Under the pieces are notes generated by a model. The model was given only the letters and a program-made list of their open reading frames with translations. It had not been told where the DNA came from and did not search any database. This document shows, piece after piece, positions 25,425 through 46,445 of a stretch of 64,000 bases of DNA. Made by a program: the position numbers and the translations under genes. Source of the DNA: Octopus sinensis (taxonomy: Eukaryota); NCBI RefSeq assembly GCF_006345805.1, contig NC_043016.1, positions 10,168,001 to 10,232,000 on the forward strand, given 5' to 3'. The number at the start of each line of letters is the position of its first letter. The first letter of the stretch is position 1.

Positions 25425-25435
25425 TGTCGTCACTG

Positions 25436-25479
<44 letters not shown>

Positions 25480-26564: not shown

Positions 26565-27205
26565 TACTACCAAAAAAACTGCGTGTACTCCGTCCCATGT
26601 GATAGGCATTACAAAGGCGAAACATGCTGTCCCCTCAAAATAAGGGTAGAGGAACATTGCAAAGCTGTGACATGGGGAGATATTGATAAATTGGGTATAG
26701 CTGATCATGTATGGAAAAATGGAAACCACCTTCCCCTGTGGGATGAAGTTAAAATAATAGACAGAGAATACATCATCATCATCATCATCGTTTAACGTCC
26801 GTTCTCCATGATAGCATGGGTTGGATGGTTCGACCGGGGATCTGGGAAGCCAGGAGGCTGCACCAGGCAGTGTTTCTACAGCTGGATGCCCTTCCTAACG
26901 CCAACCACTCCGTGAGTGTAGTGGGTGCTTTTTACGTGCCACCTGCACTGGAGCCAGGCGAGGCTGGCATCGGCCATGGTCAGATTGGTGCATTTTACGT
27001 GCCACCTGCACGGAAACCAGTCGAGGCGGCACTGGCTTCGGCCACGATTCGGATGGTGCTTTTTATGTGCCACCGACACGGACAATATGGAAACTAAAAG
27101 AAGCAGCACATATGCTAGGGAACAACACCCTCCTAAGCATTCCGAGTACAGATATGAACAGCATATAGGAACCAGTATTAAGGAAAGACAGGAGAATATT
27201 AGTTT
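26565..27205 (+). mobile_element. Penelope GIY-YIG endonuclease C-terminal fragment, split by a SINE at 26770-27080
   Basis: NCVYSVPCDRHYKGETCCPLKIRVEEHCKAV...IADHVWK...WDEVKIIDRE resumes after the SINE as KLKEAAHMLG...MNSI*EPVLRK. Confidence 0.85.
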
Positions 27206-27232
27206 CATAAACTCTAAAATTCACTTCATTAT

Positions 27233-27388
27233 TGCCCACGTAGTGGTTAAGAGCGCGGGCTACTAACCCCAAGATTCCGAGTTTGATTCCAGGCAGTGAC
27301 CTGAATAAGAATAATAATAACATCGGAAAATACCTTAGGAATGAGAACCCAGCTTTGAAATTTCCCTAAAACATCTGATGAAGGCTGT
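27233..27388 (+). mobile_element. tRNA-headed SINE ending in a truncated HHR start (CTGATGAAGGCTG)
   Basis: A-box-like cgtagtggttaag and B-box-like gagtttgattcc. CTGATGA at 27375-27381. Confidence 0.55.
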
Positions 27389-27517
27389 ATTTTATTTTGT
27401 ATTTTATTTTGTAATTTTATTTGTATTGTTTTTACGTCCTGTTTTTGTCACATTTTTTTCTTTCCTTATTTTTACCCCTCTGTGAAGTAATTTTATTTAA
27501 TTCTTTCGCAGGAAGGG

Positions 27518-27600
27518 CTAGTTCAACGAGTCGTGTTCTGTCCTCACCTTCGAAACACGCATTGAGTCGAACTAGGGACAGCTGATGAAGGGGATTTTTC
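27518..27600 (+). ncRNA. Hammerhead-like motif with permuted strand order
   Basis: CGTG-TT-CTGTCC, then CCTTC-GAAA-CACG, then GGACAG-CTGATGA-AGGGG. Confidence 0.35.
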
Positions 27601-27813
27601 CTTGTATATTTTGTTTTGTACTCTGTTTTTACGTTGTTAAAAAAAAGGTCCGTTTCCATGTTTGTTTTTACGTTTTCATTTCTCGTTGGGTTCTATGTCT
27701 GTTTGTGGTGTCCTGTACTCACGTATATATATTTATATATGCATGTATATATACATGTAGATGTAGGTATGTACATATATGTATGTATGTATGCATATAT
27801 TTTATTATTACAC

Positions 27814-27870
<57 letters not shown>

Positions 27871-27879
27871 GTATATATC

Positions 27880-28215
27880 AGTTGTGGCTGCATGATAAGA
27901 GGTTGCTTCCCAATCATATACCTCCAAGTTCAGTCCCACTGTGTGACACCTTGGGTGAAGTGTTGTCTAACCAGAGCCTTGTGAGTGGCTTTGGTAGATG
28001 GAAACTGAAAGAAACCCATTGTGTATATGTACTTCATCACCGTTTGGTAACTTGTGTTGGCATGTTTACATCCCTGTAACTTAGTGGTTTGGCGAAAGAG
28101 ACTGATAGAATAAGTACTAGGCTTAAGAAATAAGTCCTGGAATTCATTTGTTCGACTAAAACCCTTTGTGGCCGTGCTCCAGTACGGCCACAGTCAAATG
28201 ACCGAAACTAAGTAG
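27880..28215 (+). mobile_element. Family-A SINE, diverged
   Basis: Head, core and tail recognisable. Confidence 0.75.
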
Positions 28216-28889
28216 AATATATGTATAGTGGCTGTTGAGACATAAGGCAAGTTCAGGTGGCGGTAGAAGATTGTTTGTAGAAGCGACTTGCCTTAGATGC
28301 CATACATGTGGCACACCTGGTAGATCAATTAGTAACTACTGGTACGGAAAGACGATTAGAGACAAATTAGATTGCTTTAAATTTTCCTTTTCTCCTAGTG
28401 TTAATTGGCCTGTGTTGTGTAATGTAATTTAATGAAAGACCGTGATTAAACTCTGGACACAAATTATTACTAAGCGTGGTCCCCTTCTCTTTGTGCGTTT
28501 CTGCCATTCAAAGGCTCAACACTTAACATTAATCATTTGCTCATTATCGCCCCCATCATCTTCTATTTGCAGAGCTGCTGCTTTTTATTTTGGATTTCTT
28601 TCATGTCTTCGTATTCTATTAGTTATTCATTACTCAATAATACTTTTATCTTTAAATCTTAATATTAATCTCATTAAATCATTGCACACTATTGGCAAAG
28701 TTCTTTCTCTCTGTGGAACGCAATTTCTACTCGTGTGATCTCATTAATTATTACCATTTGGCCCTCTGGATTTAGCATTATTGTAAGTATACTGACCCAT
28801 TATTGACATCAACTTGAAATCTTCATTTGTCCTTAACATATGTTTACATTTTGTGTGTCTGGTCAAGATACAATGCAGAGTAATAAACT

Positions 28890-30165
28890 TATGAAACAGC
28901 TTCTACATGGATAACACAGTCATAAACTTATGACTTTCCTGAGTTAGCCATGAAACAGCTTCTACACAATGCACAGTCATAAACTTATGACTTCCCTGAG
29001 TTAGCCATGAAACAGCTTCTACACAATGCACAGTCATAAAATTATGACTTCCCTGAGTTAGCCATGAAACAGCTTCTACACAATGCACAGTCATAAAATT
29101 ATGACTTCCCTGAGTTAGCCATGAAACAGCTTCTACACAATGCACAGTCATAAAATTATGACTTCCCTGAGTTAGCCATGAAACAGCTTCTACACAATGC
29201 ACAGTCATAAAATTATGACTTCCCTGAGTTAGCCATGAAACAGCTTCTACACGATGCACAGTCATAAAATTATGACTTCCCTGAGTTAGCCATGAAACAG
29301 CTTCTACACAATGCACAGTCATAAACTTATGACTTCCCAGAGTTAGCCATGAAACAGCTTCTACACAATGCACAGTCATAAAATTATGACTTCCCTGAGT
29401 TAGCCATGAAACAGCTTCTACACAATGCACAGTCATAAACTTATGACTTCCCTGAGTTAGCCATGAAACAGCTTCTACACAATGCACAGTCATAAAATTA
29501 TGACTTCCCTGAGTTAGCCATGAAACAGCTTCTACACAATGCACAGTCATAAACTTATGACTTCCCAGAGTTAGCCATGAAACAGCTTCTACACAATGCA
29601 CAGTCATAAACTTATGACTTCCCTGAGTTAGCCATGAAACAGCTTCTACACAATGCACAGTCATAAACTTATGACTTCCCTGAGTTAGCCATGAAACAGC
29701 TTCTACACAATGCACAGTCAAAAACTTATGACTTCCCAGAGTTAGCCATGAAACAGCTTCTACACAATGCACAGTCATAAACTTATGACTTCCCTGAGTT
29801 AGCCATGAAACAGCTTCTACACAATGCACAGTCATAAACTTATGACTTCCCTGAGTTAGCCATGAAACAGCTTCTACACAATGCACAGTCATAAACTTAT
29901 GACTTCCCAGAGTTAGCCATGAAACAGCTTCTACACAATGCACAGTCATAAACTTATGACTTCCCTGAGTTAGCCATGAAACAGCTTCTACACAATGCAC
30001 AGTCATAAACTTATGACTTCCCTGAGTTAGCCATGAAACAGCTTCTACACAATGCACAGTCATAAACTTATGACTTCCCAGAGTTAGCCATGAAACAGCT
30101 TCTACACAATGCACAGTCATAAACTTATGACTTCCCTGAGTTAGCCATGAAACAACTTCCACAAG
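28890..30165. repeat. Minisatellite, 57-bp unit, about 22 copies
   Basis: Unit catgaaacagcttctacacaatgcacagtcataaacttatgacttccctgagttagc, with internal hairpin AGTCATAA-AC-TTATGACT. Confidence 0.97.
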
Positions 30166-30446
30166 AGGTGCGGGCAAGGCTGTGCAGTTATGAAGTTTAC
30201 TTCACAACCACATAGTTCCTGGTTCAATCTCACTGCATGGCACTTTGGGTGAGTGTCTTGCATTATAACCTCGGACCGACCATTGGCATGTGAGTGAATT
30301 CGATAGACAAAAAACTGTTAAAGGCCATCATATCTGATACACAAGCACTCAACTAAGACTATATTGTATCTTAGAACAGAAACACCTGCAAGGTAATGAA
30401 GGTCATTGGATAATTTCTTGTTTCCTTGTCATTTTATATGATCCCT

Positions 30447-30479
<33 letters not shown>

Positions 30480-30499
30480 TGTTGGCATCTTTTTGTCTT

Positions 30500-30900
30500 G
30501 GGAGACAATGGAGTTGCGCATAAGCTGATCCAGTCTGGTTTTTACATTTCATGTCCTCTCCAGTTTTGCACAGGGCTGGGCTAGATGTAAGAAAATCCTG
30601 GGTAGCCCAATTGTCAGGATTCCTCTCTAGACCTTGCTTTTGTAGCCCAAAGGAGTGCAGAGCATTATGTTTGGCAGCAGCTTGGTTACAGGAGCTGCCA
30701 GAAGAGTGTCAAGTCGAACACTAAACCACCTACGGGGCTTCACTTCGGATTTCTTTGAAGGTTGTCTCCTTTCCATAACCCTGGGTGGGGGCCCATACCA
30801 GCTACTGTCAGCCGGAGCCAGCTGAGCCCGAAACTTGTATCAGACAGGGTCATCACTCCCTGAAGTAGTGAAGAAAATCACTACCCACTACCTATACAAT
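30500..30900 (-). mobile_element. Probable LINE (RTE-like) 5' region fragment
   Basis: GC-richer non-coding island whose general resemblance to RTE 5' UTRs is recalled. No diagnostic peptide. Confidence 0.25.
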
Positions 30901-31199
30901 GCACAATCATAAACAACAACAACAGCAACATTATTCTTCAAATTTTGATACTCTAAAGGAAATTTTTAATGCATTAATGTGTGTATGTGTATATATCATC
31001 ATCATCATCATCGTTTAGCGTCCGCTTTCCATGCTAGCATGGGTTGGACGGTTCAGCTGGGGTCTGGGAAGCCAGAAGGCTGCACCAGGCCCAGTCTGAT
31101 CTGGAAATGTTTCTACAGCTGGATGCCCTTCCTAACTCCAACCACTCCGTGAGTGTAGTGGGTGCTTTTTACGTGCCAGACAAGGCTGGCAAACGGCCA

Positions 31200-31245
<46 letters not shown>

Positions 31246-31617
31246 GCACACGCACACACACATATACACACATATGCATGTATGCAGTGTGTGTGTAGTT
31301 TGGTGTGGTATGTTTGAAATGTGCAACTAAAACCTTAACATGTGATTTAAATGCACTGCTAACACAGTAGAACATGGTACTGACTTATAAAAACGCTTCA
31401 TATATACTTTGTAGCATAGGAAAGAATAGTTACTTCTCCATTAATCTGGTAAAACTTCCCATCTTGTTCAACCGGAATGGCTTTAGCCAGTTATTTTTCT
31501 GTAATGAATACATAACGAAAAACCGTGTGCCTACAAGTCATTAGTATCGGAGATGTAGTCCTGGGACTTGTCAGGTTAAAAAATCCAACCTCCATGCCTG
31601 CATGGAACATGGACATT

Positions 31618-32585
31618 AAATGATGATAATGATGATAATGGTAATGATGTTGATGATTGTTGATGATGATGATGGTGATGTTGATGGTTAATGATAATGA
31701 CAATAATGATGATGAGGATGATGGTGATGGTGATGATAATGATGATGATGGTGATGATGATGGTTGATGATGATTGATGATGATGATGATGGTGATGATG
31801 ATTGATGATTGAAGATGATGATGATAATGGTAATGATGATGATGATGGTAATGATGATGGTTGATGATTGATGATGACAATGATGATGATAGTGATGATT
31901 GACGATTGAAGATGATGATGACAATGATGATAATGATGATGATGGTGATATTGATGATTGATGATTGAAGATGATGACGACAATGATGATAATGATGGTA
32001 CTGATGATGATGATGGTAATGATGATGGTTGATGATGATTGATGACGACAATGATGATGATGGTGATGATGATGGTTGACAATTGAAGATGACAATGATG
32101 ATGGTGATGTTGATGATAATGATGATGATGGTGTGATGGTTGATGATAATTGATGATGATGACGACAAACGATGATGAGGATGATGGTAACGATGGTTGA
32201 TGATTGATGATGATGATTGATGACAATAATGATGATGATGACAATGATGATGATGGTGATGATGATGGTTGATGATTGATGATGATGGTGATGGTTGATG
32301 ATTGATGGTGACGATAATGATGATGGCAATGATAATGATGGTTGATGATTGATGATGATTAATGATGATGACGACAATAATGATGGGGATAATGATGATG
32401 ATGGTGACGATGGTGGATGATGGTGATGACGATGACAATGAGGATGATGGTGATGATAATGATGATTACAATGATGATGACGATTGATGATGATTGATGA
32501 TGACGGTGACGACGATGAAAGTGACAATGCTGATGAGGACAATGATGACAATGATGATGATAATGACAGTGATGATGATGATTAC
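31618..32585. repeat. Degenerate (GAT)n field with gattgatt punctuation
   Basis: Direct reading. Confidence 0.95.
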
Positions 32586-32872
32586 GACTCTCCAGTTAAG
32601 ATAGGATTGTTTTTACAAGAAATTTACATTTAGTAACTGAAATGACCCTTGCATATTCATTAAATCTGCAACCTACCCCACAAGTGTTACTCATGAGTGA
32701 GTATGAGTGTGAGAATGAACTTGAATGTGATTTGGTAATATGTACCATATTTCTACTAATTATTTTGGGTACGTATGTAGTTATGAACTGACACAGGTAC
32801 CCAACCAACCCTGTTGCTCTTGATTCAATAGAGCATCTAGGTCGTGATAGCTAAATAGATAAAGAGAGAGAG

Positions 32873-32903
<31 letters not shown>

Positions 32904-33710
32904 AAGAGAGAGAGAGAGAAGGCTGTGTCAATACTAATTTTCTAGCTGAGTAAACTGGAATCCCATCAAATGAAGTACTCTTCTTTTTTTGAAGCCTGGT
33001 ATTTATTATACTGATCTCTTTTGCTGAACCACTAGGTTATGGAGGTGACAGGAGGTGAACACATACACAAAACTAACACCCACACCCACACCCACACACC
33101 CACACCCACACACACACACCACACACACACACACACATAATGGGCTTCTTTAAATTTCTATCTACCAAATCTACTCACAAGGTGCCAAGCAGTAGGACTG
33201 AACTCAGAACCGTTCAGTTTGGAAGCAAAGTTCTTACCACACAGCTACACTTGCGTGTATATATATGTGATCATTGCCAGAGCAACAAACTGGCTTCTGT
33301 GCCGGTGGCACGTAAAAAGCACCATTTGAGCGTGATCGTTACCTGTGTCGCCTTACTGGCACTTGTTCTGGTGGCATGTGAAAAAAACATCTGAGTGAGG
33401 TTGTTACCAGTGCTGCTGGACTGGCTCCTGTGCAGATGGCACGTAAAAAGCACCATTTGAATGTGGTCGTTGCCAGTACCACCTAACTGGCCCTCATGCC
33501 GGTGGCAGGTAAAAGCACCCATTACACTCTTGGAATGGTTGGCATTAGGAAGGGCATCCAGCTGTAGAAACTCTGCCAGATCAGATTGGAGCCTGGTGCA
33601 GCCATCTGGTTCACCAGACCTCAGTCAAATCATCCAACCCATGCCAGCATGGAAATCGGACGTTAAACGATGATGATGATGATACTGTGTGTGTGTGTAT
33701 ATATATATAT

Positions 33711-34380
33711 AAATCTATATTCAGGGCAAGCAAGTATACAGGCCAAGCCACACGCTGAAAGGAGACACCAAATATCTTTAAACTACCTTAAAATATCACA
33801 ATAAACATGCACCAAACTTAATCAAATAAATGAAAAAGATTCATGTAAAAGTTGAATTACATATCAATGGATTTCAGGATTAAGAGGAAACCCCTTTTTC
33901 CGTCATCAGTGTAATACAACCCAATGTATATAAAAATGAACAATTATACATACCCCATAAACGCAATGGCTTCACGGCACAAAAATGACTGTTCATACTT
34001 ATATACAAATTACAATTGAAAAAAATTCAGATTGTTTATTTTCGACCGTGTGTGAATAACGAAATAATTCAGCAGTGAATATTTTTGGTTTAGGTGAAAT
34101 TATATATATTTTTGGTATATTTTAAAATTTAGGATAAAATCTATATATGATTTTATCTGGTAGTTAGCATGTAATGAACCGGTTAAGTTAAAATTAATAA
34201 ATTTATAAATCTATATTCAGGGCAAGCGAGTAAGTATGCAGGCCATGCCACATGCTGAAAGAAGATGCCAAATATCTCTAAATTACCTCAAGATATCACA
34301 ATAGACATGTGCCAAACTCAGGCAAATAAATGAAAAAGATTCATGGCAAAGGTTCAATTACATATTGATTTCAGGATTTG
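33711..34380 (-). mobile_element. Partial tandem (~500-bp unit, ~1.35 copies) with HHR; retrozyme/pLTR-like
   Basis: 33711-33885 is repeated at 34207-34380. Complete HHR at 33856-33915, and only its 3' half in copy 2. Confidence 0.7.
33856..33915 (-). ncRNA. Type I hammerhead ribozyme motif
   Basis: ATTACA-CTGATGA-C-GGA..AAGGGG ttt CCTCTT..TCC-T-GAAA-TCcattGA-TA-TGTAAT, with a perfect 6-bp stem I. Confidence 0.7.
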
Positions 34381-35179
34381 GGGAAAATGCATGGCACCTT
34401 GGGCAAGTATCTTTTCCTATAGCCTTGGGCTGATCAAAGCATTGTGAGTGGATTTGATAGATGGAAATTGATGGAAGACCATCATAATAATATATATCCT
34501 CTGATTTGAAGCAACAATTTTTAAATGCTTACAAAGCCTTTCTGGCTTGTTTACAGATATTATATATATCATCATCATCATCATCATCGTTTAACGTCTG
34601 CTTTCCATGCTAGCATGAGTTGGATGATTTGACTGAGGTCTGGCGAACCAGATGGCTGCACCAGGCTCCAATCTGATCTGGTAGAGTTTCTACAGCTGGA
34701 TGCCCTTCCTACTGCCAACCCCTCCGAGAGTGTAGTGGGTGCTTTTATGTGCCACCGGCACAAGGGCCAGTCATGCAATACTGGCAATGGCCATGCTCAA
34801 ATGGTGCTTTTTATGTGGCACCTGCATAGGAGCCAGTCCAGCAGCACTGACAATGACCTCACTCAAATGTTTTTTCAATGCCACCAGCACAAGTGCCAGT
34901 AAGGTGACGCAGGTATATAATATATATATATATGTGTGTCTGTGTGTGTTTATATGTATGTATAAAGTAAATAAAAGAGAATGGAGAAGAAAAAATATAA
35001 TAACTGCTTGGTTTATTTTATTTGTATCACACACACACACGTGTACCCTTAACGTAGTTCTCAGGGAGATTCAGCGTGGTGTAGTGTGTGTAAAAAGGCT
35101 GGCCCTTTGAAATACAGGTACAACAGAAACAGGAAGAAAGAGCGAGAGAAAGTTGTGGTGAAGGGGTACAGCAGGCTTA

Positions 35180-35409
35180 TATACATACATACATACATAC
35201 ATACATACATACATACACACATTCATGCGTATGTACATACATACATACATACACACATACATATATACATACATACATACATACACACATTCATATGTAC
35301 ATACATACATACATACATACATACATACGTACACACATTCATACATACGTACATACTTACATACATACATACATACATATATACATACATACATACATAC
35401 ATACATACA

Positions 35410-35443
<34 letters not shown>

Positions 35444-35770
35444 AATACGTACATACATACACACATTCATATGTACGTACATACATACATACATACATAC
35501 ACACACATACATACATACATACACACATTCATATGTACGTACATACATACACACACATACATACATACATACATACATACACACATACATACATACATAC
35601 ATACATACACACATTCATACGTACGTACATACATACATACACACACATACATACATACATACACACACATACATACATACATACATACATACACACATTC
35701 ATACGTACGTACATACATACATACATATATACATACATACATACACGCACACACACACACACACACACAC
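35180..35770. repeat. (TACA)n/(CA)n microsatellite field
   Basis: Direct reading. Similar fields at 40010-40490 and 50190-50670, and (TATC)n at 13400-13525. Confidence 0.95.
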
Positions 35771-35980
35771 CTCTCAGATGCTTACTACCTTATCTATTCC
35801 TTTAATCTGAATGCATCATTCAAAATACTGCCTGGATATACCTGGGATTATTCTTAAGGGATTATACCTTCATGGAACTCCATACAAGATGAACTGTGAA
35901 CTTTATTTTTCTTCTCTCTACCGTTTTATTCTTCTATATGCTACGAATTCTCTGTCTGGAACTTTCCTACATACACACCT

Positions 35981-36062
35981 TGTCTCTGATGACAGAATAC
36001 CCAGTGTTTGCGGGTGTTGACCCATCACTCACCTGGGATATCCCAGAAACAGCTGTCAGACA
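35981..36062 (+). ncRNA. Type I hammerhead ribozyme motif with canonical core and GUC site
   Basis: TGTCT-CTGATGA-[stem II: CCCAG/CTGGG, GGGT/ACCC]-GAAA-CAGCTG-TC-AGACA. 5-bp stem I and self-complementary ACAGCTGT. Confidence 0.8.
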
Positions 36063-36163
36063 TTAATTACATCTAATTCTCCATTTTTGATTCACCTTAC
36101 TCTGATTAGATTTTCTAAATGACCTGAGATACTCTTCCTGCCTTGGTCTTTTTTTCCTTTTTC

Positions 36164-36201
<38 letters not shown>

Positions 36202-36217
36202 CACCACACACACACAC

Positions 36218-36260
<43 letters not shown>

Positions 36261-36636
36261 TTGCATGTCCGTGTCCCCTTACCATTGCTTGGTGTGTTTA
36301 TGTCCCTGTTTCTTAATGGTTTGACAAGAGAGGCTGATAGCATAAATACTAGGCCTAACAAGAATAAGTCCTGGGATCAATTTCTTTGACTAAAACCTTT
36401 TTACGCAGTGCTCCAGCATGGCCACATTTCAAATGACTGAAACGAGTAAATGAATTAAAGAAGTCAACATTCTAATATCCTAAAGCTGACAAACCAACTA
36501 TTGTGTTTCTCCATTTTCTTATTTGTAATATAAATTAATGGTAAAATATTTCTTTACCTTCACCCATTTAATACAATAAGTGAGTTTATTGCATTGCAAT
36601 TAAAAACACTTGTGTCATTGATAATTGAGTATTATA

Positions 36637-37052
36637 CCTATTTTTTACTACCCACAAGGGGCTAAACACAGAGGGGACAAACAAGGACAGACATACGGAT
36701 CAAGTCGATTATAATGACCCCAGTGCACAACTGGTACTTAATTTATCGACCTCTGAAAGGATGAAAGGCAAAATCGACATTGGCGGAATTTGAACTCAGA
36801 ACATAACGGCAGACGAAATACCTATTTCTTTACTACCCGCAAGGGGCTAAACACATAGAGGACAAACAAGGACAGACAAACGGATCAAGTTGATTATATT
36901 GACCCCAGTGCGTAACTGGTACTTAATTTATCGACCCCGAAAGGATGAAAGGCAAAGTCGACCTCAGCGGAATTTGAACTCCCAACGTAACGCAGACGAA
37001 ATACCGCTAAGCATTTCGCCCGGCGTGCTAACATTTCTGCTAGCTTGCCACC
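36637..37052 (-). mobile_element. Family-D SINE partial dimer
   Basis: 3' part duplicated head-to-tail at junction gacgaaatacctatttc. Confidence 0.85.
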
Positions 37053-37329
37053 TTGGGTATTATACCGACAGTCCGACAGTATATTGGATAAGTATTATCC
37101 CTTAGTGGGTTGGATCCACAACCCTTAACTTACTTGGTATATATCTTTTTTATCTTTTACCTTTAACTTGTTTTCAGTCCTTGACTGCGGCATGCTGGAG
37201 CACCACCTTTAATCGAGCAACTCGACCCCGGGACTTATTCTTTTGTAAGCCCAGTACTTATTCTATCGTCTCTTTTGCTGAACCGCTAGTAACGGGGACA
37301 TAAACACACACACGCATTTGGTTGTCAAG

Positions 37330-37429
37330 NNNNNNNNNNNNNNNNNNNNNNNNNNNNNNNNNNNNNNNNNNNNNNNNNNNNNNNNNNNNNNNNNNNNNNN
37401 NNNNNNNNNNNNNNNNNNNNNNNNNNNNN
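37330..37429. other. Assembly gap (100 N)
   Basis: Run of N characters. Confidence 1.
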
Positions 37430-37650
37430 GTTATACAGTCAAACTTTTTACTCTGGTCCTAGGCAACTTACCTGGTATCCTAGGTAACAGAAGTGATCAT
37501 CTACTTGTAGTTTGTCTCCTGGAACGTGGTAGAGAAGTTGGTCTCTGCACATTTTCAGTGTTTATTGCTCCTGTGCATCTGCCACACACAAAACCTATCT
37601 CCCCAGTTAACCTTCCTTTGATATTACTGCACCTCTTAATTGTCCATAGC
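37430..37650 (-). mobile_element. RTE LINE reverse-transcriptase fragment
   Basis: WTIKRCSNIKGRLTGEIGFVCGRCTGAINTENVQ followed, after a frameshift, by a degenerate KL(E/Q)VxDxFxYLG motif. Confidence 0.7.
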
Positions 37651-37999
37651 ATATATATATATATATATATATATGATAAATGAAAGAGAAAAGATGGAAT
37701 ACATGAGAATTTTTATTATTGATCACAACAATTGTTTCAACACATCCAGTGTGTGTGGAGGTGTATGACTTTGTGGTTGGGTTTTGCACTCATGTTCCAA
37801 GATTATTGTTTTCATTCCTGGACCAAGCAATACATTGCGTTGTTGAGCAGGTCACTTCATTTCACATTGCTCCAGTCGACTCATCTGGCAAAAATGATCA
37901 ACTTCACAATGGACCCATGTTCCTTCCAACAGGGAATATATATATACATCAGAGAATCTGGGGAACCAGTCTTATGAGCCTGTGCCTCAGGGAGAACCT

Positions 38000-38392
38000 T
38001 TTACTTGTTTCAGTCATTAGACTGTGGCCATGAAGAATGTTAGTTGAATAAATTGACTCCAGTACAGTGTTTTCTTAAGCTGGTACTTATTCTATCAATC
38101 TCTTTTGCCAAACTGCTAAGTTACTGGGATGTAAACACACTGACAGTTGTGAGAGTGGGGTGATAACACAGACACAAAGATACACACACACGCACGCATG
38201 CACACACACACACACACCACACACACACACACACACACGACAGGTTTCTTTCTGATTCCATCTAACAAATCCACTCACAAGGCTTTGGTAGGCTCATGGC
38301 TATAGTAGAAGACTTGCTCAAGGTTCCATACGGTGGGACTGAACCCAGAACAATGTGGTTGGGAAGCAAGCTTCTTACCACACAGCCAGACC
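38000..38392 (-). mobile_element. Family-A SINE, older copy
   Basis: Colinear with the family. Confidence 0.8.
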
Positions 38393-38989
38393 TATATATA
38401 TATATATATTTAATTTTTCTGGAAGCAGCTGTTTATGAAGTTTTCCTATATTGTCATTTGAAAGCTTGAAATAGGGAGTAGTAAAACAGTCGACAACTGA
38501 GGAGGGGTTAGACTTCTTGTGGTATTTTGTCCTGTACTTGTCTCTCATTATGTGTTTACATATTTTTCACTCTTTGGTGATGTCCTGTTCTTATTCTATA
38601 TTTTCGGGTAATTTGTCCTGTGCTTATCGCTTATGTGTCTATTTATTTTTCATGTATTTCATATATATAATAGCCCAACTCTATCTCCACCCTCAGCCAA
38701 ACCCACACCCCACCCGTGCTTTCCCCACTCTCACCTCCCCCACCTCCCAACCACATCACACCACATTACACCATACAATATTACACATCACATCACAACA
38801 CACCACCCACACACCAGCACTGACCAATTCCCATCCCCACATTTTCACACACCTACACACACACACACGCACACGTCAAGATCACCAGCCCTCTTTCACA
38901 CGCACATATGTACTCTCTTACACACTCGCGCACCTTCGTTTTGGGATCACTACTACTTTGTTATCTCCCCTACTTCTTAGTTCTCCTGT

Positions 38990-39194
38990 GTGACCCTTCT
39001 GTCCAGCATTCACCATGGTAGATCGTTAGCCACTACATACATTTTTTTTCACTCCTTGTTTTCTGTGTCCCTTTCTGTAGAAGAGCGTAGGCTCGAAATG
39101 TTAAAGACTTTTTCAATTCCCGAACATTATACTAATTCATCTGTTTGTTTTCTAAACCATCTGTCTTCATCTTTTGTTTTCTTTGTAAATTCTT

Positions 39195-39200
<6 letters not shown>
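38990..39200 (+). mobile_element. Penelope-type pLTR relic with variant HHR-like motif
   Basis: CTTT-CTGTAGA-A-GAGC gtag GCTC-GAAATGT-T-AAAG at 39071-39106. Homologous to 4440-4682. Confidence 0.5.
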
Positions 39201-39236
<36 letters not shown>

Positions 39237-39266
39237 AATCTTAAATAAATGGATGCTTAAACATAC

Positions 39267-39471
39267 AGGCGCAGGAGTGGCCGTGTGGTAAGTAGCTTGT
39301 TTACCAACCACATGGTTCCAGGTTCATTCCCACTGTGTGGCACCTTGGGCAAGTATCTTCTACTATAGCCTCGGTCCGACCAAAGCCTTGTGAGTGGATT
39401 TGGTAGACAGAAACTGAAAGAAGCCCGTCGTATATATATATATATGTGTGTGCATATCTGTGTTGTCTCCC

Positions 39472-39508
<37 letters not shown>

Positions 39509-39715
39509 ATATGTTTGTGTGTCTGTGTTTGTCCCTCTAGCATTGCTTGACAACCGATGCTGGTGTGTTTATGTCCCTGTTACTTAGCGGTTCGGCAAAA
39601 GAGACCGATAGAATAAGTACTGGGCTTACAAAGAATAAGTCCCGGAGTCGAGTTGCTCGATTAAAGGCGGTGCTCCAGCATGGCCGCAGTCAAATGACTG
39701 AAACGAGTAAAAGAA
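39267..39715 (+). mobile_element. Family-A SINE, full length
   Basis: Starts aggcgcaggagtggccgtgtgg. Confidence 0.9.
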
Positions 39716-40655
39716 AGAAAAAAAGAAAAAAAAGAATACACAAATAGACAAAAACAGATAGATAGTTTGGTTAACACACTGTTGACGACAAAACCACAAA
39801 TGAAATCAGATACCATGGAAGAAACGTACTGTAATAGAACGCAGTAAATGAAGACGGAACACACACAGCATCCACCCATCCCCCCACACACAGTCTGTCA
39901 TTATCGGCCATTATCAGCTGCTGCCTCCTCTAAATTAAATCAATTACAATTTATAGAACGATAAATAATAACGAATGGAACATATGAAATATATTTCAGA
40001 TATCTCATATCACACCCACACATATGCATACATGGGCACACACTCATACACGCACATACATGCACACAGACACACATACACACATACATGCTCATACACA
40101 CACACACTCATACACACACAATATACACTCATACACACAGACACACATACACACATACATGCTCCTATACACACACACTCATACACACACAATATACACT
40201 CATACACACAGACACACATACACACATACATGCTCCTATACACACACACTCATACACACACAATATACACTCATACACACATACACACTTACACGCTCAT
40301 ATACACACACACTCATACACACACAATATACACTCATACACACACATACGTACACACAGACACACATACACACATACATGCTCTCACACACACACACACA
40401 CTCATACACACACATGCACACATACACATTCATACACACATGTGCACACTCATACACACATGTGCACACTCATACACACACACACACACATATGGATGCT
40501 CACTACTGCTGTACAATGTGTGGAACATCTCCATACATTGGCAGGCTTCATAGGGCATGTCTGCTTCCTAACCACTTGGTTCTGAGTTCAGTCCCAAGAA
40601 CTTGTATGTGGGTTTAGTAAATGGAACTGAAAGAAGTCTATCATGCACACCACAC

Positions 40656-40692
<37 letters not shown>

Positions 40693-40904
40693 GTAAGCAC
40701 ACAAATGCATAACAAGGTGGAAGAAAATGGTACTTGAATACCAAAGGTAGAGTAATATACTTTTTTATTAAAGCTGCAAAACTATCACAAAGCCATTACT
40801 CAGAGTTTCACGTTCCTTTTTGTCTAATAGGAACATGAAACTCTGAGTAATGGTTTTGTGATAATTTTGCAGCTTTAATAAAAGTGTTATATTCTCTTTT
40901 TTTT

Positions 40905-41365
40905 TTACTTGTTTCAGTCATGTGACTGTGGCCATGCTGGAGCACCACCTTTAGTCGAGCAAATTGACCCCAGGGCTTATTCTTTGTAAGCCTAGTACTT
41001 ATTCTATCGGACTCTTTTGCCGAACTGCTAAGTAACGGGAACGTAAACACACCAGCATCAGTTGTCAAGCGATGTTGGGGGGACAAACACAGACACACAA
41101 ACATATACACACACATACACATATATATATATGTATGTATATATATATATATATAAATGGTGGTGCCCCAGCATGGCCACAGCTCGTGAGCTGAAACTAG
41201 ATAAAATAAAAAAAAATAATATATATATTTCCGTCTACCAAATCCACTCACAAGGCTTTGGTCAGCCCTAGGCTATAGTAGAAGACACTTGCTCAAGGTG
41301 CTATGCAGTGGGACTGAAGCCGGAACCATGTGGTTGGTAAACAAGCTAGTTACGACACAGCCAAT
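40905..41365 (-). mobile_element. Family-A SINE with internal insertion
   Basis: Colinear apart from about 41155-41225. Confidence 0.8.
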
Positions 41366-41546
41366 ATATGCATATATACTCACATGCATGTACATGCCTA
41401 CATTTATATGTATATATACATGCACATATGGGTACATGATGTCAGTCATCACTGAACATGACTAAGGGTGTAAACACACCAACATTGCTAGAAATAAGAG
41501 CTAAAATACTCTAATGCTGTAGGGGAAGCACATAAATGTATATGTA

Positions 41547-42383
41547 TGAGGTTTGATCAACAAGTATGTGGAATGTTGCCATAGTAATGAAGCCAAAACA
41601 TGCAGAGTAAAGCTACTTGGCAAAGATTGACCTTGAACTCTGCTGTACATGCGCACTAAGTTTTAACATTGTAGCTCACTTCCACTGTTTACAGCAGTAC
41701 TTGGAAGGAAGGTGTGTAGTGTGTGGTTATTGCATTGACCATGACAAAGTTGAGTAGAGAATCTGCATCAAATTTTGCCGAAAGCTTGGCAATACCTGCT
41801 CAGAGGCCTATGCAAAGTTTCCAAAAAGTATTCATCATTCTCAACGCAATAAAGGAGATCTTGTCCAACTGAAACCTGTCTCTTTGGTCAGCTGAAAACA
41901 AATTTGGTACAAACCTGGCAGACATGCGTATCATATCCAAATCTTCATTGATAATGGACTGAACTGAACTATAACTAATCAGCACATCCTCTGATAACTC
42001 ACAGATGGTGATTTGATGATTTCCTCTCACAGCTGCATGCATATCTGCAATGCTTTTCTCAGTTCTGCTGGTTGCTGGTCTCCCAGAATGTTTGTCAATA
42101 TTGGCATATTTTTAGCCATCTTAGAAATGTCTGAACCACTCGTACACTTCTGTGTGGTTCATACACTCCTCTTTATGCACTATCTGCAACTTTGCATCAG
42201 CTTCTAAGCAGGTATTGCCGTGACAACTTTTTGTCATGGTCAATGCGACAATCACATGCTACACACCTTCCTTCCAAGCACTGCTGTTAACAGCAGAAGC
42301 GAGGTAGGATGTTAAGACTTAGTGCACATACATAGTAGAGTTAATCTTTGCCAAGCAGCTTCACCATTGTTGGTCAGACCTCG
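41547..42383. mobile_element. Mariner derivative made of two inverted 5' ends, TA target duplication
   Basis: TA at 41545-46 and 42384-85. The + arm encodes E*RICIKFCRKLGNTCSEAYAK, and the - arm encodes the HTH region through SVQSIINEDLDM..MSARFVP. Confidence 0.8.
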
Positions 42384-42659
42384 TATACTCTCACAGGGGT
42401 TGTAATCACCCAAAACACTGACTCAAGAATTTCTTTGACAGAACATCCAGTTTCAGCTATTTCCGTAGCCTTCATCAGTAAGGACCACTCGTTTTGCTGA
42501 TTCCAGGCGAATCCTCCTGTCAGCAAATATGACATAAAAATTTACGGGTAGTTTAGTGGATCACTAATGTGTATACAAAAATTAATATAAACAGCCATGC
42601 ACAATGTGATACCATAGAGGAAAGGTATAAACGTCACATTGTGCATGGTTGTGTATTAT

Positions 42660-43050
42660 TTTTATTTGTTTCAGTCATTTGACTGTGGCTATGCTGGAGC
42701 ACTGCCTTTAGTCGAGTAAATTGACTCCAGGACTTATTCTTTGTAAGCCTAGTACTCATTCTATCAGTTCTCTTGCTGAACCACTAAGTGACAGGGACGT
42801 AACACACCAGCATTGGTTGTCAAACGATGTTGGAGGGACAAACACACACACAAACATATACACATATATATATATATATATATATATACGATGGGCTTCT
42901 TTCAGTTTCTATCTACCAAATCCACTCATAAGGCTTTGGTTGGCCAGAGGCTATAGTAGAAGACACTTGCCTAAGGTGCCATGCAGTGGGACTGAACCTG
43001 GAACCATGTGGTTGGTAAGCAAGCTACTTACCGCACAACCACTCCTATGC
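42660..43050 (-). mobile_element. Family-A SINE inserted in the right arm of the foldback element
   Basis: Palindrome symmetry resumes across it. Confidence 0.85.
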
Positions 43051-44113
43051 TTATTAATTTTTTGTATACACATTAGTGATCCACTAAATCATCCATAAAT
43101 TTTTACGATAAATGTATATATACTGACAGTGGATTAAGCCTGGAAATAACTGAATGAGTGATCATGCTGATGAAGGCTACAGAAATAGCCGAAACTGAAC
43201 CTTCTGTCTAAGAAATCTTCAAGTTGGTATTTTGGGCAATTGCAGGCCCTGTGAGCATATATGTGTATATTTATGTGGCTTTCCTACAGCAGTAAACCAT
43301 TTTAGCTCTTATTTCTAGCAATGTAGGTGTCTTGACACACTTAGTCATGTTGAGTGACATATTTTCCCTTTATGGTATCACATTGGGAGGAGCTGTTTAT
43401 ATTAATTTTTGTATATATATATATCTTAATAATACTAAAACTCTAGGGATGTTTGTACCCCAAATATCCCAGAAGTATATTTTATCTTCAGCAATGCAGT
43501 ACAAATTTTGTAGCATTTGGGCCTCTATTTGTTAATGAAAACGAGTAAACACAATTTTCGTTTGTTATTTCTTGACAGAAAAAGAACATGGCTTCCATGA
43601 TGTCAACACACATAGACACATACAGAATGCACACACACACGTGTAATGAATATCGTGGTGTGTCAATCAACACAAACACACATCCACTATCTGTGACATG
43701 TAAGCACACATAGACTTTGTGCTCTCTAAGAAAAAATGCCGACTTTTTGATGTATATAATATTTTAATCATTTAGAAATATTTTTTACTGAATGTGATTT
43801 CAAATATATAAATTGTTTGTACATTATTTATTTATATTTTAGCTTTCTTTAAACAGACAATATTTTAATGGTTTTTAAATTAGTTTTGAGTCATTAATTT
43901 CCGTAAAATTTTTTTATTTATTTACTTTTGTTTTAAAGTGAAAGAGAGGAGAAAATGAAAGATGTATGTGAGTGTATACGAAATAGATGTGTGTGTGTGT
44001 GTGTGTGAAAGAGAGAGAAAAATTGAGAGAGGTAGAAAGAGAGTGAGTGAAGGGGTATGTTGTTATGAATACGTACATACATCAATACATGTGCGTAAAT
44101 TTTTTTGTATGTA

Positions 44114-44145
<32 letters not shown>

Positions 44146-44629
44146 GGGGGAGAGAAAGAGAGTGAGTGAGTGAGTGAATGTATGTGTTCTCATATATGTA
44201 TAAGTGACACTCTCTCTCTCTCTTACACACACACGCACACACACACGTCCATTTTATATACACATTCATACATCTTTCGCTTTCTCCTCTCTTACAGTTT
44301 AAAACAAAAATTTTTTCAGAATTTAACAAACAAAACCAGCTGATCTGGTTGACAGTTCTGAGAGGTAAAGCGAAAGATCCCCCCAAGAGAATACCTTTAC
44401 AGAAAGTTTTTCATGTGCATTCAGCATATCTCGGCTCCAAAGATTTGGCTTCTATTTCTAGCACGCCTTGCCACTACATAACAGCTATTTGCGATAAAGG
44501 ACCCGAAATACCTGTTACATGATAGCAGGGCATGCAAGAAATAACAGCCAAATCTTTCCTTTTCTGTGGAAAGGAGCCATTTATGCGAGGTTTTGATGTG
44601 ATATTCATTAAAAGCATGCAAAATAACCC

Positions 44630-44932
44630 GTAACTTAGTGGTTCGGCAGAAGAGTCTGATAGAATAAGTACTAGGTTTACAAAGAATAAGTCCTGGGGTC
44701 GATTTGCTCGACTAAAGGAAGTGCTCCAGCACGGCCACAGTCAAATGACTGAAATGAGTAAGAGAGTAAAAGAGGCTTCTTTCAGTTTCCGTCTACCAAA
44801 TCCACTCACAAGGCTTTGGTCGGCCCGAGGTTATAGTAAAAGACGCTTGCCCAAGGTGCCATACAGTGGGAATGAACCCGAAACCATGAGGTTGGTAAGC
44901 AAGTTACTTACCACACAGCCACTCCTACGCCT
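44630..44932. mobile_element. Family-A SINE with its 5' half inverted relative to its 3' tail
   Basis: Tail on + (44630-44772) abuts head on - (44773-44932). Confidence 0.7.
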
Positions 44933-45047
44933 GGGCTTTTTTTTTCAGCACTTTATATCTGTACGAGATACTTTCTCAAAATGGGTGCCACAGTTTTCTG
45001 GCTTTCACCAGTATCTGCATGTGAAGCAAGACATACAGACTGATATA

Positions 45048-45448
45048 CTCTTTTACATGTTTCAGTCATTTGACTGCGGTCATGCTGGAGCACCGCCTTT
45101 TGTCGAGCAAATCGACCCCGGGACTTATGCTTTTGTAAGCCCAGTACTTATTCTATCGGTCTCTTTTGCCGAACGCTAAGTGACGGGGACGCAAACACAC
45201 CAGCATCGGTTGTCAAGCAATGCTAGGGGGACAAACACAGACACGCAAACACACACACACACACATATATATATACATATATACGACAGGCTTCTTTCAG
45301 TTTCCGTCTACCAAGTTCACTCACAAGGCATTGGTCGGCCCGGGGCTATAGCAGAAGACACTTGCCCAAGGTGCCACACAGTGGGACTGAACCCGGAACC
45401 ATGTGGTTGGTAAACAAGCTACCTACCACACAGCCACTCCTGCGCCTA
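45048..45448 (-). mobile_element. Family-A SINE flanked by an 86-bp direct duplication
   Basis: 44962-45047 equals 45449-45534. Confidence 0.9.
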
Positions 45449-45776: not shown

Positions 45777-45821
<45 letters not shown>

Positions 45822-46392: not shown

Positions 46393-46445
46393 TGAGAACG
46401 TACGTTTCAAGATTAGTCAAAATCCGACATTTTATCATCAGCTCA
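46393..46445 (-). ncRNA. Type I hammerhead ribozyme motif (copy 1)
   Basis: TGAG-CTGATGA-[stem II]-GAAA-CGTACG-TT-CTCA, with palindromic ACGTACGT. Confidence 0.75.

What the first reader, a model, noticed from the sequence alone, without database searches (positions are those of the whole stretch)
35981..36062. Canonical-core hammerhead in sense orientation inside the 42-kb ABHD11 intron
Seen: UGUCU-CUGAUGA...GAAA-CAGCUG-UC/AGACA, with a perfect 5-bp stem I, a GUC triplet, palindromic ACAGCUGU and a long branched stem II (CCCAG/CUGGG plus GGGU/ACCC). It is on the same strand as the host exons. Inference: it could cleave the pre-mRNA co-transcriptionally after 36057 and affect splicing or intron turnover. 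It may be restrained by the need to dimerise.
Basis: partly seen in the sequence, partly recalled or inferred. Interest (0 to 1): 0.78.

Follow-up and report, generated by a model that had tools for sequence, protein, structure and literature searches.

The report
Decayed retroelement hammerhead relic in intron
The hammerhead-ribozyme motif is really in the sequence, but it sits in an old, mutated copy of a short repeated mobile element inside a 42-kb intron and has lost the helix next to its catalytic core, so it is most likely an inactive relic, not a regulator of the host gene.

Summary
Both flanking exons are on the + strand around a 42,182-nt intron.

Three points weaken the functional reading:
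- **Helix II does not close on the core.** The four positions next to it are C·A, A·C, G-C and A·C.
- **No covariance model recognises it.** Rfam gives no hammerhead hit even at E<=10. A model built here from 32 intact hammerheads with the same GAAACAGCUGU half scores independent controls at 45-62 bits. The candidate gets only an 11.6-bit local hit.
- **It is not a unique site.** It lies in a ~350-nt repeat with two more copies in the window (5648-5994(-), 5999-6345(+)). These form a head-to-head pair with simple-repeat tails, as Penelope-like retroelements do.

The copies carry complementary defects. This points to an ancestral type-I hammerhead with a 7-bp helix II, since decayed, partly at CpG sites.

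Verdict: a decayed retroelement hammerhead, a new member of a known kind, of low interest. Conservation in other species and RNA ends could not be tested.

The parts
35981..35985 (+). Helix I, 5' strand (UGUCU, positions 2.5-2.1)
   Evidence: Pairs perfectly with 36058-36062. The next pair outward would be U·U.
35986..35992 (+). Core box CUGAUGA (C3-A9)
   Evidence: Read directly.
35993..36045 (+). Helix II region. It is a 53-nt imperfect hairpin that does not close on the core (C·A, A·C, G-C, A·C, then A-U, U-A, A-U, a bulged A, then CCCAG/CUGGG). It holds about 32 nt more than the paralogues do.
   Evidence: All three core-proximal mismatches are A·C, each one transition away from a Watson-Crick pair.
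36033..36046 (+). Competing hairpin CUGGG-AUAU-CCCAG, which pairs core G12
   Evidence: Present in the minimum-free-energy fold.
36046..36048 (+). Core G12 A13 A14
   Evidence: Read directly.
36049..36056 (+). Helix III, palindrome ACAGCUGU. As a monomer it forms 2 bp (A15.1-U16.1, C-G) plus an AGCU loop. In a dimer it could form 8 bp.
   Evidence: The identical GAAACAGCUGU half occurs in an intact hammerhead family and at L001:18069-18115.
36057..36057 (+). C17, the predicted cleavage site (cut after this base)
   Evidence: Position follows from the hammerhead numbering. No cleavage was shown.
36058..36062 (+). Helix I, 3' strand (AGACA, positions 1.1-1.5)
35808..36156 (+). The repeat copy (family A) that carries the motif. 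Its 5' side abuts a (TATG/CA)n microsatellite and its 3' end ...GCCTTGGTCTTTTTTT...CATTCAC runs into (CA)n.
   Evidence: A gap-tolerant local alignment to 6033-6326 scores 37, against 13.5 +/- 3.0 for 300 real control segments, none of which reaches it. BLAST gives E 0.005 for the 27-nt core block. nhmmer recovers it.
5999..6345 (+). Family A copy 2, with a hammerhead-like motif at 6230-6277 (CCGAUGA, compact helix II GGGAUA/UAUCCU with loop CAAUAAA, GAAAC, ACAACUGU, GUA) and an A-rich tail
5648..5994 (-). Family A copy 3, the inverted twin of copy 2 (arms 5670-5994 and 5999-6323, 98% complementary, 4 nt apart), with its motif at 5716-5763
8899..9069 (+). Upstream coding exon of the host gene (acceptor AG 8897-8898, donor GTAAGT 9070-9075)
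   Evidence: The spliced peptide aligns without a break to YbfF-type esterases.
9070..51251 (+). The 42,182-nt intron that contains the candidate
51252..51433 (+). Downstream coding exon (acceptor AG 51250-51251, donor GTATGT 51434-51439)

Best explanation
The motif is the remnant of a type-I hammerhead ribozyme. It was carried near the 3' end of a short (at least ~350 nt) retroelement, either the terminal part of a Penelope-like element (PLE) or a non-autonomous, retrozyme- or SINE-like derivative of one.

In the active element, the published model for such hammerheads applies (inferred, not shown here). The weak palindromic helix III lets two ribozymes on one multimeric transcript pair with each other. 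They then cut the RNA to unit length for reverse transcription or circularisation.

This copy inserted at a microsatellite in the intron and has since decayed:
- Two or three G-to-A transitions, two of them at inferred CpG sites, opened the core-proximal part of helix II.
- Loop 2 holds about 32 nt more than in the paralogues.
- No partner copy lies in tandem.

Today it is most likely neutral intronic DNA. It is transcribed with the pre-mRNA, removed with the intron, and has no significant self-cleavage.
For: 1. Repeat family.
- Two further copies in the window share the same ordered blocks: CACACC..TCTC-GATGA..ATATCC..GAAACA-CTGT-AGACATT..GCCTTGGT-T(n).
- The full-length alignment score lies far outside 300 real-sequence controls.

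2. Element architecture.
- The two other copies form a head-to-head inverted pair, 98% complementary with 4 nt between the arms.
- All three 3' ends run into poly(A) or microsatellites.
- Inverted 5'-truncated partners, a bias for inserting at microsatellites and hammerheads near the 3' end are described for PLEs (PMC8557442). Close hammerhead pairs on opposite strands are also reported (PMC4209133).

3. Complementary decay.
- The candidate keeps CUGAUGA, the perfect palindrome, GUC and a 5-bp helix I, but has a broken helix II (CAGAAUA/UAUCCCA).
- Copies 2 and 3 keep a compact helix II (GGGAUA/UAUCCU, 7-nt loop). They have U4-to-C, a broken palindrome and a 3-bp helix I.
- Each copy's 5' strand pairs 6 of 7 with the other copy's 3' strand.
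- All three mismatches in the candidate are A·C.
- The simplest ancestor is CGGGAUA/UAUCCCG. The changes CG-to-CA (twice, candidate) and CG-to-UG (copy 2) are typical CpG decay (my inference).

4. The 3' half GAAACAGCUGU(C).
- It is identical to that of an intact type-I hammerhead family recovered from metagenome contigs.
- In that family 95.8% of cells are paired, 8 of 12 pairs show compensatory changes, and slid controls give 27-32%.
- It also matches L001:18069-18115, which scores 55.4 bits.

5. Inactivity.
- No Rfam hammerhead hit, even at E<=10.
- The custom model gives only an 11.6-bit local hit, against 45-62 bits for controls with helix II segments of 12-18 nt.
- The best predicted fold sequesters G8, A9, G12, U16.1 and C17.

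6. Background.
- The window holds other hammerhead-like repeats on both strands.
- It also holds a fragment of a PLE-type GIY-YIG endonuclease.
- PLEs are abundant and old in octopus genomes (PMC13282606).
Against: - Only two independent lineages of the family are available, so the ancestral hammerhead is inferred from them, not read from a consensus.
- No reverse-transcriptase or endonuclease ORF is linked to family A in the window, so the PLE assignment rests on architecture alone.
- The inferred ancestor would have C10.1-G11.1, not the G10.1-C11.1 that is highly conserved in PLE hammerheads.
- Covariance models penalise the long helix II insertion heavily, so low scores partly reflect length rather than loss of function.
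- The nearest-neighbour folding test does not discriminate. The intact control and the inferred ancestor also put the hammerhead fold at about 1e-5 of the ensemble.
- Hammerheads with little or no helix II ('minizymes') keep some activity, according to established literature that I recall but did not re-read here.
- Conservation at the orthologous site could not be examined.
Confidence: 0.68

Rival explanations
1. Hammerhead look-alike in a repeat that never encoded a ribozyme. On this view family A merely resembles a hammerhead, and this copy drifted to a perfect core by chance. Some PLE clades are reported to carry 'HHR_core' strings that fit no helix descriptor.
For: - Copies 2 and 3 lack U4 and the perfect palindrome.
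- None of the three copies scores as a hammerhead with Rfam or with model R1.
- Naiad PLEs, present as remnants in cephalopods, lack canonical hammerheads but can carry core strings (PMC8557442).
- At 0.0033 per window, a large genome would hold about 100 chance matches (extrapolated).
Against: - The candidate would have had to gain U4, the palindrome-restoring G and two extra helix I pairs independently. Loss of these in the other lineage is far more likely at the observed divergence.
- The paralogues have a proper hairpin exactly where helix II belongs.
- All mismatches in the candidate's helix II are one transition away from a pair.
- The 3' half is identical to that of an intact hammerhead family.
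- The hammerhead block is the best-conserved part of the repeat.
Confidence: 0.17
2. Residual weak ribozyme with no function. The copy still cleaves very slowly in vitro, at high Mg2+ or when artificially dimerised, as reported for PLE minimal hammerheads, but this has no effect on the host transcript.
For: - The core, C17, helix I and the 8-nt palindrome are all intact.
- PLE minimal hammerheads showed low activity, mostly at non-physiological Mg2+ and only as dimers or with an extended helix III (PMC4209133).
Against: - The bases flanking the core in helix II are unpaired.
- Competing pairings involve G8, A9, G12 and C17.
- There is no tandem partner.
Confidence: 0.1
3. Domesticated intronic ribozyme. 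A hammerhead in the sense orientation cuts the nascent ABHD11-like pre-mRNA after 36057 and so influences splicing or intron turnover, like the conserved intronic hammerheads of amniotes.
For: - The motif is in the sense orientation, deep in a very long intron, 26.9 kb from the donor and 15.2 kb from the acceptor.
- The core is complete.
- There is a precedent. Type-I hammerheads resembling retroelement ones are conserved in introns of RECK, CTCL and DTNB (PMC6155905).
Against: - Helix II is defective and there are no loop-loop contacts.
- No covariance model recognises the site.
- It is one of several hammerhead-like repeat copies lying on both strands in the same gene, so there is no orientation bias.
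- The decay pattern looks neutral.
- A vertebrate survey found retrozymes depleted from introns (bioRxiv 10.64898/2026.07.22.740005).
Confidence: 0.04

Closest known systems
Minimal hammerheads of Penelope-like elements (Cervera and de la Pena 2014, PMC4209133)
   Same: - Type-I topology.
- Short helix I (4-5 bp; here 5).
- Long helix II (7-8 bp; the inferred ancestor has 7).
- Palindromic positions 15.2-16.2, which imply action as a dimer.
- Huge numbers of diverged solitary copies, and pairs on opposite strands 100-700 bp apart.
- The host element inserts at microsatellites and forms inverted partial copies (PMC8557442).
   Different: - No reverse-transcriptase or endonuclease ORF is linked to this family in the window.
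- The present copy lacks the conserved G10.1-C11.1 pair. The inferred ancestor would have C-G there.
- It has a real 2-bp helix III with a tetraloop instead of none.
- Helix II carries about 32 extra nt.
Canonical animal type-I hammerheads of non-LTR retrozymes and Sm-alpha-like SINEs (PMC7229834, PMC6155905)
   Same: [quoted passage not shown]
- The GAAACAGCUGUC half is identical to a family of intact hammerheads recovered here.
- It is carried by a short non-coding repeat.
   Different: - Those have helix I of 6 bp and helix II of 4-5 bp closing on the core, and score 45-62 bits with model R1. The candidate does not.
- Retrozymes are tandem arrays with a hammerhead in each unit. The candidate is solitary.
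Conserved intronic hammerheads of amniotes (Rfam HH9 and HH10; RECK, CTCL and DTNB introns)
   Same: A type-I hammerhead in the sense orientation in an intron of a protein-coding gene, thought to derive from retroelement hammerheads.
   Different: - Those are intact and ultraconserved across species, with tertiary loop contacts.
- This one is structurally damaged, gets no HH9 or HH10 hit even at E<=10, and its conservation is untested.
Engineered 'minizymes', hammerheads lacking helix II (recalled from the literature, not re-read here)
   Same: An intact core with no stable helix II next to it, so any activity would be expected to be orders of magnitude below that of a full ribozyme.
   Different: Minizymes are designed trans-cleaving constructs with optimised arms. 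This is a natural decayed sequence with competing folds.

Membership tests
Hammerhead ribozyme (any type) | Conserved core: C3 U4 G5 A6 N7 G8 A9, G12 A13 A14, and an A15.1-U16.1 pair | tested here: met
   CUGAUGA 35986-35992, GAA 36046-36048, A 36049 and U 36056.
Hammerhead ribozyme (any type) | Cleavable triplet with H17 (not G) followed by helix I | tested here: met
   GUC with C17 at 36057. Helix I is UGUCU/AGACA, 5 Watson-Crick pairs.
Hammerhead ribozyme (any type) | Helix II closing directly on the core (10.1-11.1 and 10.2-11.2 paired) | tested here: not met
   C·A, A·C, G-C, A·C next to the core. The first run of pairs starts 4-5 positions out.
Hammerhead ribozyme (any type) | Recognised by curated or purpose-built covariance models | tested here: not met
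   - Rfam: nothing at gathering score and no hammerhead family at E<=10 in 601 nt.
- Model R1: an 11.6-bit local hit on GAAACAGCUGU only. Controls score 45-62 bits.
- Caveat: Rfam is weak on this class. An intact control reached only 20.9 bits.
Hammerhead ribozyme (any type) | Site-specific self-cleavage giving 2',3'-cyclic phosphate and 5'-OH ends | not testable with these tools
   Needs a transcription and cleavage assay, or end-specific RNA sequencing.
Animal type-I hammerhead (retrozyme / Sm-alpha type) | Helix III of 1-2 bp capped by a 2-4 nt palindromic loop | tested here: met
   A-U and C-G plus an AGCU loop. This is the same as in the 32-sequence reference family.
Animal type-I hammerhead (retrozyme / Sm-alpha type) | Tandem repeats with a hammerhead in each unit | tested here: not met
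   The candidate is solitary. The nearest copy on the + strand is at 6230, about 30 kb away.
PLE minimal hammerhead | Short helix I (4-5 bp) and palindromic positions 15.2-16.2 | tested here: met
   5 bp, and the palindrome ACAGCUGU. Criteria from PMC4209133.
PLE minimal hammerhead | Highly conserved G10.1-C11.1 and a helix II of 6-8 bp, often after one unpaired nucleotide | tested here: not met
   - The present copy pairs 4 of 7 positions, and none next to the core.
- Paralogue copy 2 has 6 of 7 (GGGAUA/UAUCCU).
- The inferred ancestor has 7 bp with C-G at 10.1-11.1 (inference).
PLE minimal hammerhead | Located in the pseudo-LTR of an element that encodes a reverse transcriptase and a GIY-YIG endonuclease | tested here: inconclusive
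   - No such ORF adjoins any family A copy.
- The architecture is PLE-like: a head-to-head inverted pair with microsatellite targets.
- An unrelated fragment of a PLE-type endonuclease lies at about 26574-26780.
PLE minimal hammerhead | Membership of a multi-copy consensus family with compensatory changes | tested here: inconclusive
   - There are three copies but only two independent lineages in 64 kb.
- Their strands complement each other across copies.
- The rest of the genome could not be reached.
Domesticated intronic hammerhead (HH9/HH10-like) | Conserved at the orthologous intron across species | not testable with these tools
   No cephalopod genome was reachable:
- protein searches were empty;
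- exact-ORF look-ups were empty;
- the metagenome scan for the family-specific string gave 0 hits;
- the ENA contigs that were fetched come from an unrelated organism.
Domesticated intronic hammerhead (HH9/HH10-like) | Sense orientation within an intron of a coding gene | tested here: met
   Exons 8899-9069 and 51252-51433 are on the + strand with consensus splice sites. The spliced peptide aligns without a break to PDB 7c4d, E 8e-10.

The most novel reading that the evidence does not exclude
A retroelement hammerhead has been co-opted in a cephalopod gene. On this reading, the extended helix II and the palindromic helix III keep it mostly off. Occasional co-transcriptional cleavage after 36057 then breaks the 42-kb intron and tunes the output of the ABHD11-like gene. 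This would be an invertebrate counterpart of the amniote RECK and CTCL intronic hammerheads.
Probability: 0.03. Interest if true: 0.6.

Novelty: new member of a known kind. Interest (0 to 1): 0.14.

Why it matters
As it stands, it matters little. Hammerhead motifs scattered by Penelope-like elements and retrozymes are known to litter animal genomes, and most copies are dead.

There are two modest points of value:
- **A caution for genome scans.** A perfect core, a perfect helix I and a GUC site can survive in a copy whose helix II has decayed. Core-based descriptors will therefore flag relics. Checking for paralogues and checking that helix II closes on the core separates relics from candidates for function.
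- **Several hammerhead-like repeat families in one 64-kb window.** My literature searches found no description of cephalopod hammerheads.

If this copy were active, against expectation, it would be the first intronic hammerhead proposed to act on a host transcript outside amniotes.

Tried and rejected
- **Rfam.** Nothing at gathering score over the whole window, and no hammerhead at E<=10 around the site. Rfam also misses the window's other hammerhead-like repeats and barely sees an intact control. I therefore gave the negative result limited weight and built my own model.
- **Thermodynamic test.** I computed the fraction of the folding ensemble compatible with a hammerhead. It is 8e-7 for the candidate, but only about 5e-6 to 5e-5 for the intact control, the inferred ancestor and family B. 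I rejected it as non-discriminating.
- **A strict local alignment of the candidate to copy 2** was not significant (score 38, shuffles 30 +/- 4.5). A gap-tolerant alignment judged against real-sequence controls was.
- **Reaching the orthologous intron or more family copies.**
  - Protein searches with the exon peptides were empty.
  - Exact-ORF look-ups were empty.
  - The metagenome scan for the family-specific 24-mer gave 0 hits.
  - Homologues of the PLE endonuclease led to ENA assembly ERZ21867824. Its five loci (100 kb) share no megablast similarity with the window and hold no family A copy.
- **Pfam** on the exon peptides and on the candidate transposon ORFs was uninformative.
- **The 102-bp tandem repeat at 63150-63450(-)** contains CUGAUGA...GAAAC. 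Only 4 nt lie between the would-be cleavage site and the next core, leaving no room for helix I, so I rejected it as a hammerhead.
- **Regions downstream of the PLE ORFs in L001 and L002** were searched for a hammerhead related to family A. None was found.

Full report
**1. What is in the sequence**

The 82 bases at 35981-36062(+) read UGUCU-CUGAUGA-[53 nt]-GAA-ACAGCUGU-C-AGACA.
- In hammerhead numbering, all eleven conserved core nucleotides are present, together with the A15.1-U16.1 pair and C17 at 36057.
- UGUCU and AGACA form a perfect 5-bp helix I.
- ACAGCUGU is an 8-nt palindrome. In a single molecule it can form only two pairs plus an AGCU loop.

The description of helix II is not.
- CCCAG (36000-36004) pairing with CUGGG (36033-36037), and GGGU with ACCC, form one unbranched, imperfect hairpin.
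- This hairpin is separated from the core by CAGAAUA on the 5' side and AUAUCCCA on the 3' side.
- Read outward from the core, the opposing bases are C·A, A·C, G-C, A·C, A-U, U-A, A-U, then a bulged A.
- The two pairs that must stack on the core, 10.1-11.1 and 10.2-11.2, are therefore missing.
- The predicted best fold (-24.4 kcal/mol, z = -1.5) pairs GACAG (G8, A9 and three more bases) with CUGUC (including U16.1 and C17). It also forms CUGGG-AUAU-CCCAG, which takes up G12.

**2. Is it more than chance?**
- A descriptor asking for CUGANGA, GAAA, an 8-nt palindromic helix III, H17 and at least 5 bp of helix I finds one site. Shuffled windows give 0.0033 on average, and 1 of 300 shuffles reaches one.
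- The plain string CTGATGA-N30-60-GAAAC occurs 3 times, against 0.32 expected.
- Within one window this is beyond chance. Over a genome of a few Gb the same rate predicts about a hundred chance sites (my extrapolation). The decisive evidence has to come from elsewhere.

**3. Covariance models**
- Rfam gives nothing at gathering thresholds over the window. It gives no hammerhead family even at E<=10 in the 601 nt around the site.
- Rfam is weak on this class. It also misses the window's other hammerhead-like repeats and gives an intact-looking control only 20.9 bits. I therefore built a dedicated model.
51 of the matches have a 14-nt helix II segment.
- 32 distinct sequences from that set form a gapless 47-column alignment. 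95.8% of cells are paired, against 27-32% when partners are slid, and 8 of 12 pairs show compensatory changes. Three of those eight are among the four helix II pairs, which played no part in selecting the sequences.
- Model R1, built from this alignment, scores seven hammerheads that were not in the training set at 45-62 bits. Their helix II segments range from 12 to 18 nt.
- In the window, the candidate gets only an 11.6-bit local match to GAAACAGCUGU (E 0.5), and nothing is significant.
- The candidate therefore shares the 3' half of a genuine animal type-I hammerhead family letter for letter, but fails as an intact member.

**4. It is part of a repeat**
- BLAST of the surrounding 370 nt against the window finds a 27-nt match at 6254-6280 (E 0.005). 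A mismatch search finds the same block at 5715-5731(-).
- These two lie in a head-to-head pair of copies. The arms are 5670-5994 and 5999-6323, 98% complementary and 4 nt apart.
- A gap-tolerant alignment of 35808-36156 to 6033-6326 scores 37. Real control segments from the window give 13.5 +/- 3.0, and none of 300 reaches 37. A stricter scoring scheme had not been significant.
- The copies share, in order, CACACC, TCTC-GATGA, ATATCC, GAAACA-CTGT-AGACATT and GCCTTGGT-T(n).
- Each copy ends in a simple repeat: poly(A) followed by (TA)n/(TG)n for copies 2 and 3, and (CA)n for the candidate. The candidate's 5' side also abuts a long microsatellite.
- Inverted 5'-truncated partners, insertion into microsatellites and a hammerhead near the 3' end are the described habits of Penelope-like elements (PMC8557442). 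Solitary copies and close opposite-strand pairs of minimal hammerheads are reported for them as well (PMC4209133).
- PLEs are abundant in octopus genomes, with an old burst of activity (PMC13282606).

**5. What the paralogues say about the ancestor (inference)**
- Copies 2 and 3 read AUCUC-CGAUGA-A-GGGAUA-CAAUAAA-UAUCCU-G-GAAAC-AACU-GU-A-AGAC.
- They have a compact helix II exactly where a hammerhead needs one. However, they have U4-to-C, a broken palindrome and only 3 bp of helix I.
- The candidate has the opposite set of defects.
- Each copy's 5' strand pairs 6 of 7 with the other copy's 3' strand.
- All three mismatches in the candidate are A·C, each one transition away from a pair.
- The simplest common ancestor is UGUCU-CUGAUGA-CGGGAUA-loop-UAUCCCG-GAAAC-AGCU-GU-C-AGACA. 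This is a well-formed type-I hammerhead with a 7-bp helix II.
- Three of the five helix II changes are CG-to-CA or CG-to-UG, the usual decay of methylated CpG.
- Loop 2 of the candidate holds about 32 nt more than that of the paralogues.
- This pattern is what neutral decay of two copies of a ribozyme-bearing element would leave. It would be unlikely if the family had never encoded a hammerhead.

**6. Gene context**
- The + strand has an exon at 8899-9069 (acceptor AG, donor GTAAGT) and another at 51252-51433 (acceptor AG, donor GTATGT).
- Their joined translation aligns without a break across the junction to YbfF-type esterases in the PDB (7c4d, E 8e-10; residues 110-228).
- The second exon closely resembles my memory of the C-terminal half of human ABHD11. 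Pfam and the large protein database returned nothing, so neither the name nor the species could be confirmed.
- The intron is 42,182 nt long. The motif is in the sense orientation, 26.9 kb from the donor and 15.2 kb from the acceptor.

**7. Why a function in the host transcript is unlikely**
- Helix II is broken and competing folds exist.
- The motif needs a partner to extend helix III, and none lies in tandem. The only other + strand copy is in a different intron, about 30 kb upstream, and has a mutated palindrome.
- PLE minimal hammerheads cleave poorly even as dimers in vitro.
- The same gene region holds other hammerhead-like repeats in both orientations, so there is no sign of strand selection.
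- The nearest-neighbour ensemble test could not add to this, because intact controls also score poorly.

**8. Limits**
- Only two independent lineages of the family were available.
- No coding PLE is attached to any copy.

**9. Verdict**

The site is a decayed, transposon-borne type-I hammerhead. It is a new member of a known kind and most probably inert.
- Relic explanation: about 0.68.
- The repeat never encoded a ribozyme: about 0.17.
- Residual activity with no consequence: about 0.10.

Noticed in passing
window 46247-47005 (-); motifs at 46945-46998 and 46393-46445: A second hammerhead-like family (B): UGAG-CUGAUGA-U-[imperfect helix II]-GAAAC-GUAC-GU-U-CUCA, with the 8-nt palindrome ACGUACGU. 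Two 95-99% identical copies lie 549-553 nt apart on the same strand, as a head-to-tail partial tandem of about 1.4 units ending in (TA)n. This is the layout of a pseudo-LTR or a retrozyme dimer, antisense to the host gene. Neither Rfam nor R1 scores it significantly (13.0 and 11.2 bits).
   Followed up: partly
window 42384-42478 (-) and 43167-43261 (+): A third family (C), an inverted pair 688 nt apart: CUGAUGA-A-GGCUA-C(A/G)GAAA-UAGC(C/U)-GAAAC. It has an unpaired A after A9 and a clean 5-bp helix II with G10.1-C11.1 in one copy, the signature of PLE minimal hammerheads. I could not find a convincing helix I or helix III.
   Followed up: partly
window 33855-33916 (-) and 8488-8534 (+): Two further weak hammerhead-like sites. 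The first has a 6-bp helix I, CUGAUGA and GAAA but an ill-formed helix II (R1 13.5 bits, E 0.13). The second has the canonical 14-nt helix II spacing but poor pairing, and lies about 365 nt upstream of the exon at 8899 (12.8 bits).
   Followed up: no
window ~26574-26780 (+): A fragment of about 66 aa that looks like the GIY-YIG endonuclease of a Penelope-like element (…VYSVPCDRHYKGETCCPLKIRVEEH…), cut off by repeats on both sides. Nine homologues (E down to 5e-26) were found. The five I looked up all lie on contigs of ENA assembly ERZ21867824, two of them next to reverse-transcriptase ORFs. Pfam itself gave no GIY-YIG hit.
   Followed up: partly
window 63150-63450 (-): A tandem repeat with a 102-bp period. 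Each unit contains CUGAUGA...GAAAC and a GUGGU/ACCAC hairpin, but only about 4 nt lie between the would-be cleavage site and the next core. It is therefore not a workable hammerhead.
   Followed up: partly
L001:18069-18115 (+) (ENA ERZ21867824, ctg119366l): An intact-looking type-I hammerhead (6-bp helix I, GAC/GUU helix II, GAAACAGCUGUU; R1 55.4 bits). It lies directly after a stretch that looks tRNA-derived (ggtttgatctcc, resembling a B box), suggesting an Sm-alpha-like SINE that carries a hammerhead, in an unidentified animal.
   Followed up: no
L006-L125 (metagenome contigs): At least 51 contigs, mainly from a few sample series (Ga0126336, Ga0126343, OFE*, ERZ1740055, MKWU01), carry one conserved type-I hammerhead with a 14-nt helix II and AGCU loop 3, and with rich covariation. 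They are presumably animal host DNA within metagenomes. Most contigs hold a single copy and a few hold opposite-strand pairs. Matches with spacers of at least 19 nt almost never have a helix I and look like chance hits in unrelated DNA.
   Followed up: partly
window 37330-37429: A run of 100 N, an assembly gap 1.3 kb downstream of the candidate. The local structure of the intron is therefore not fully resolved.
   Followed up: no
window 28903-30177: A minisatellite of about 22 units of 57 bp that keeps a 424-aa ORF open on the minus strand (…VEAVSWLTQGSHKFMTVHC…). It is probably non-coding.
   Followed up: no
window 12584-12594 (+): A second exact GAAACAGCTGT, preceded by ACATGATGTAGGCTGT. This is either a very degenerate hammerhead remnant or chance. 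ACAGCTGT itself occurs 3 times, against 1.4 expected.
   Followed up: no
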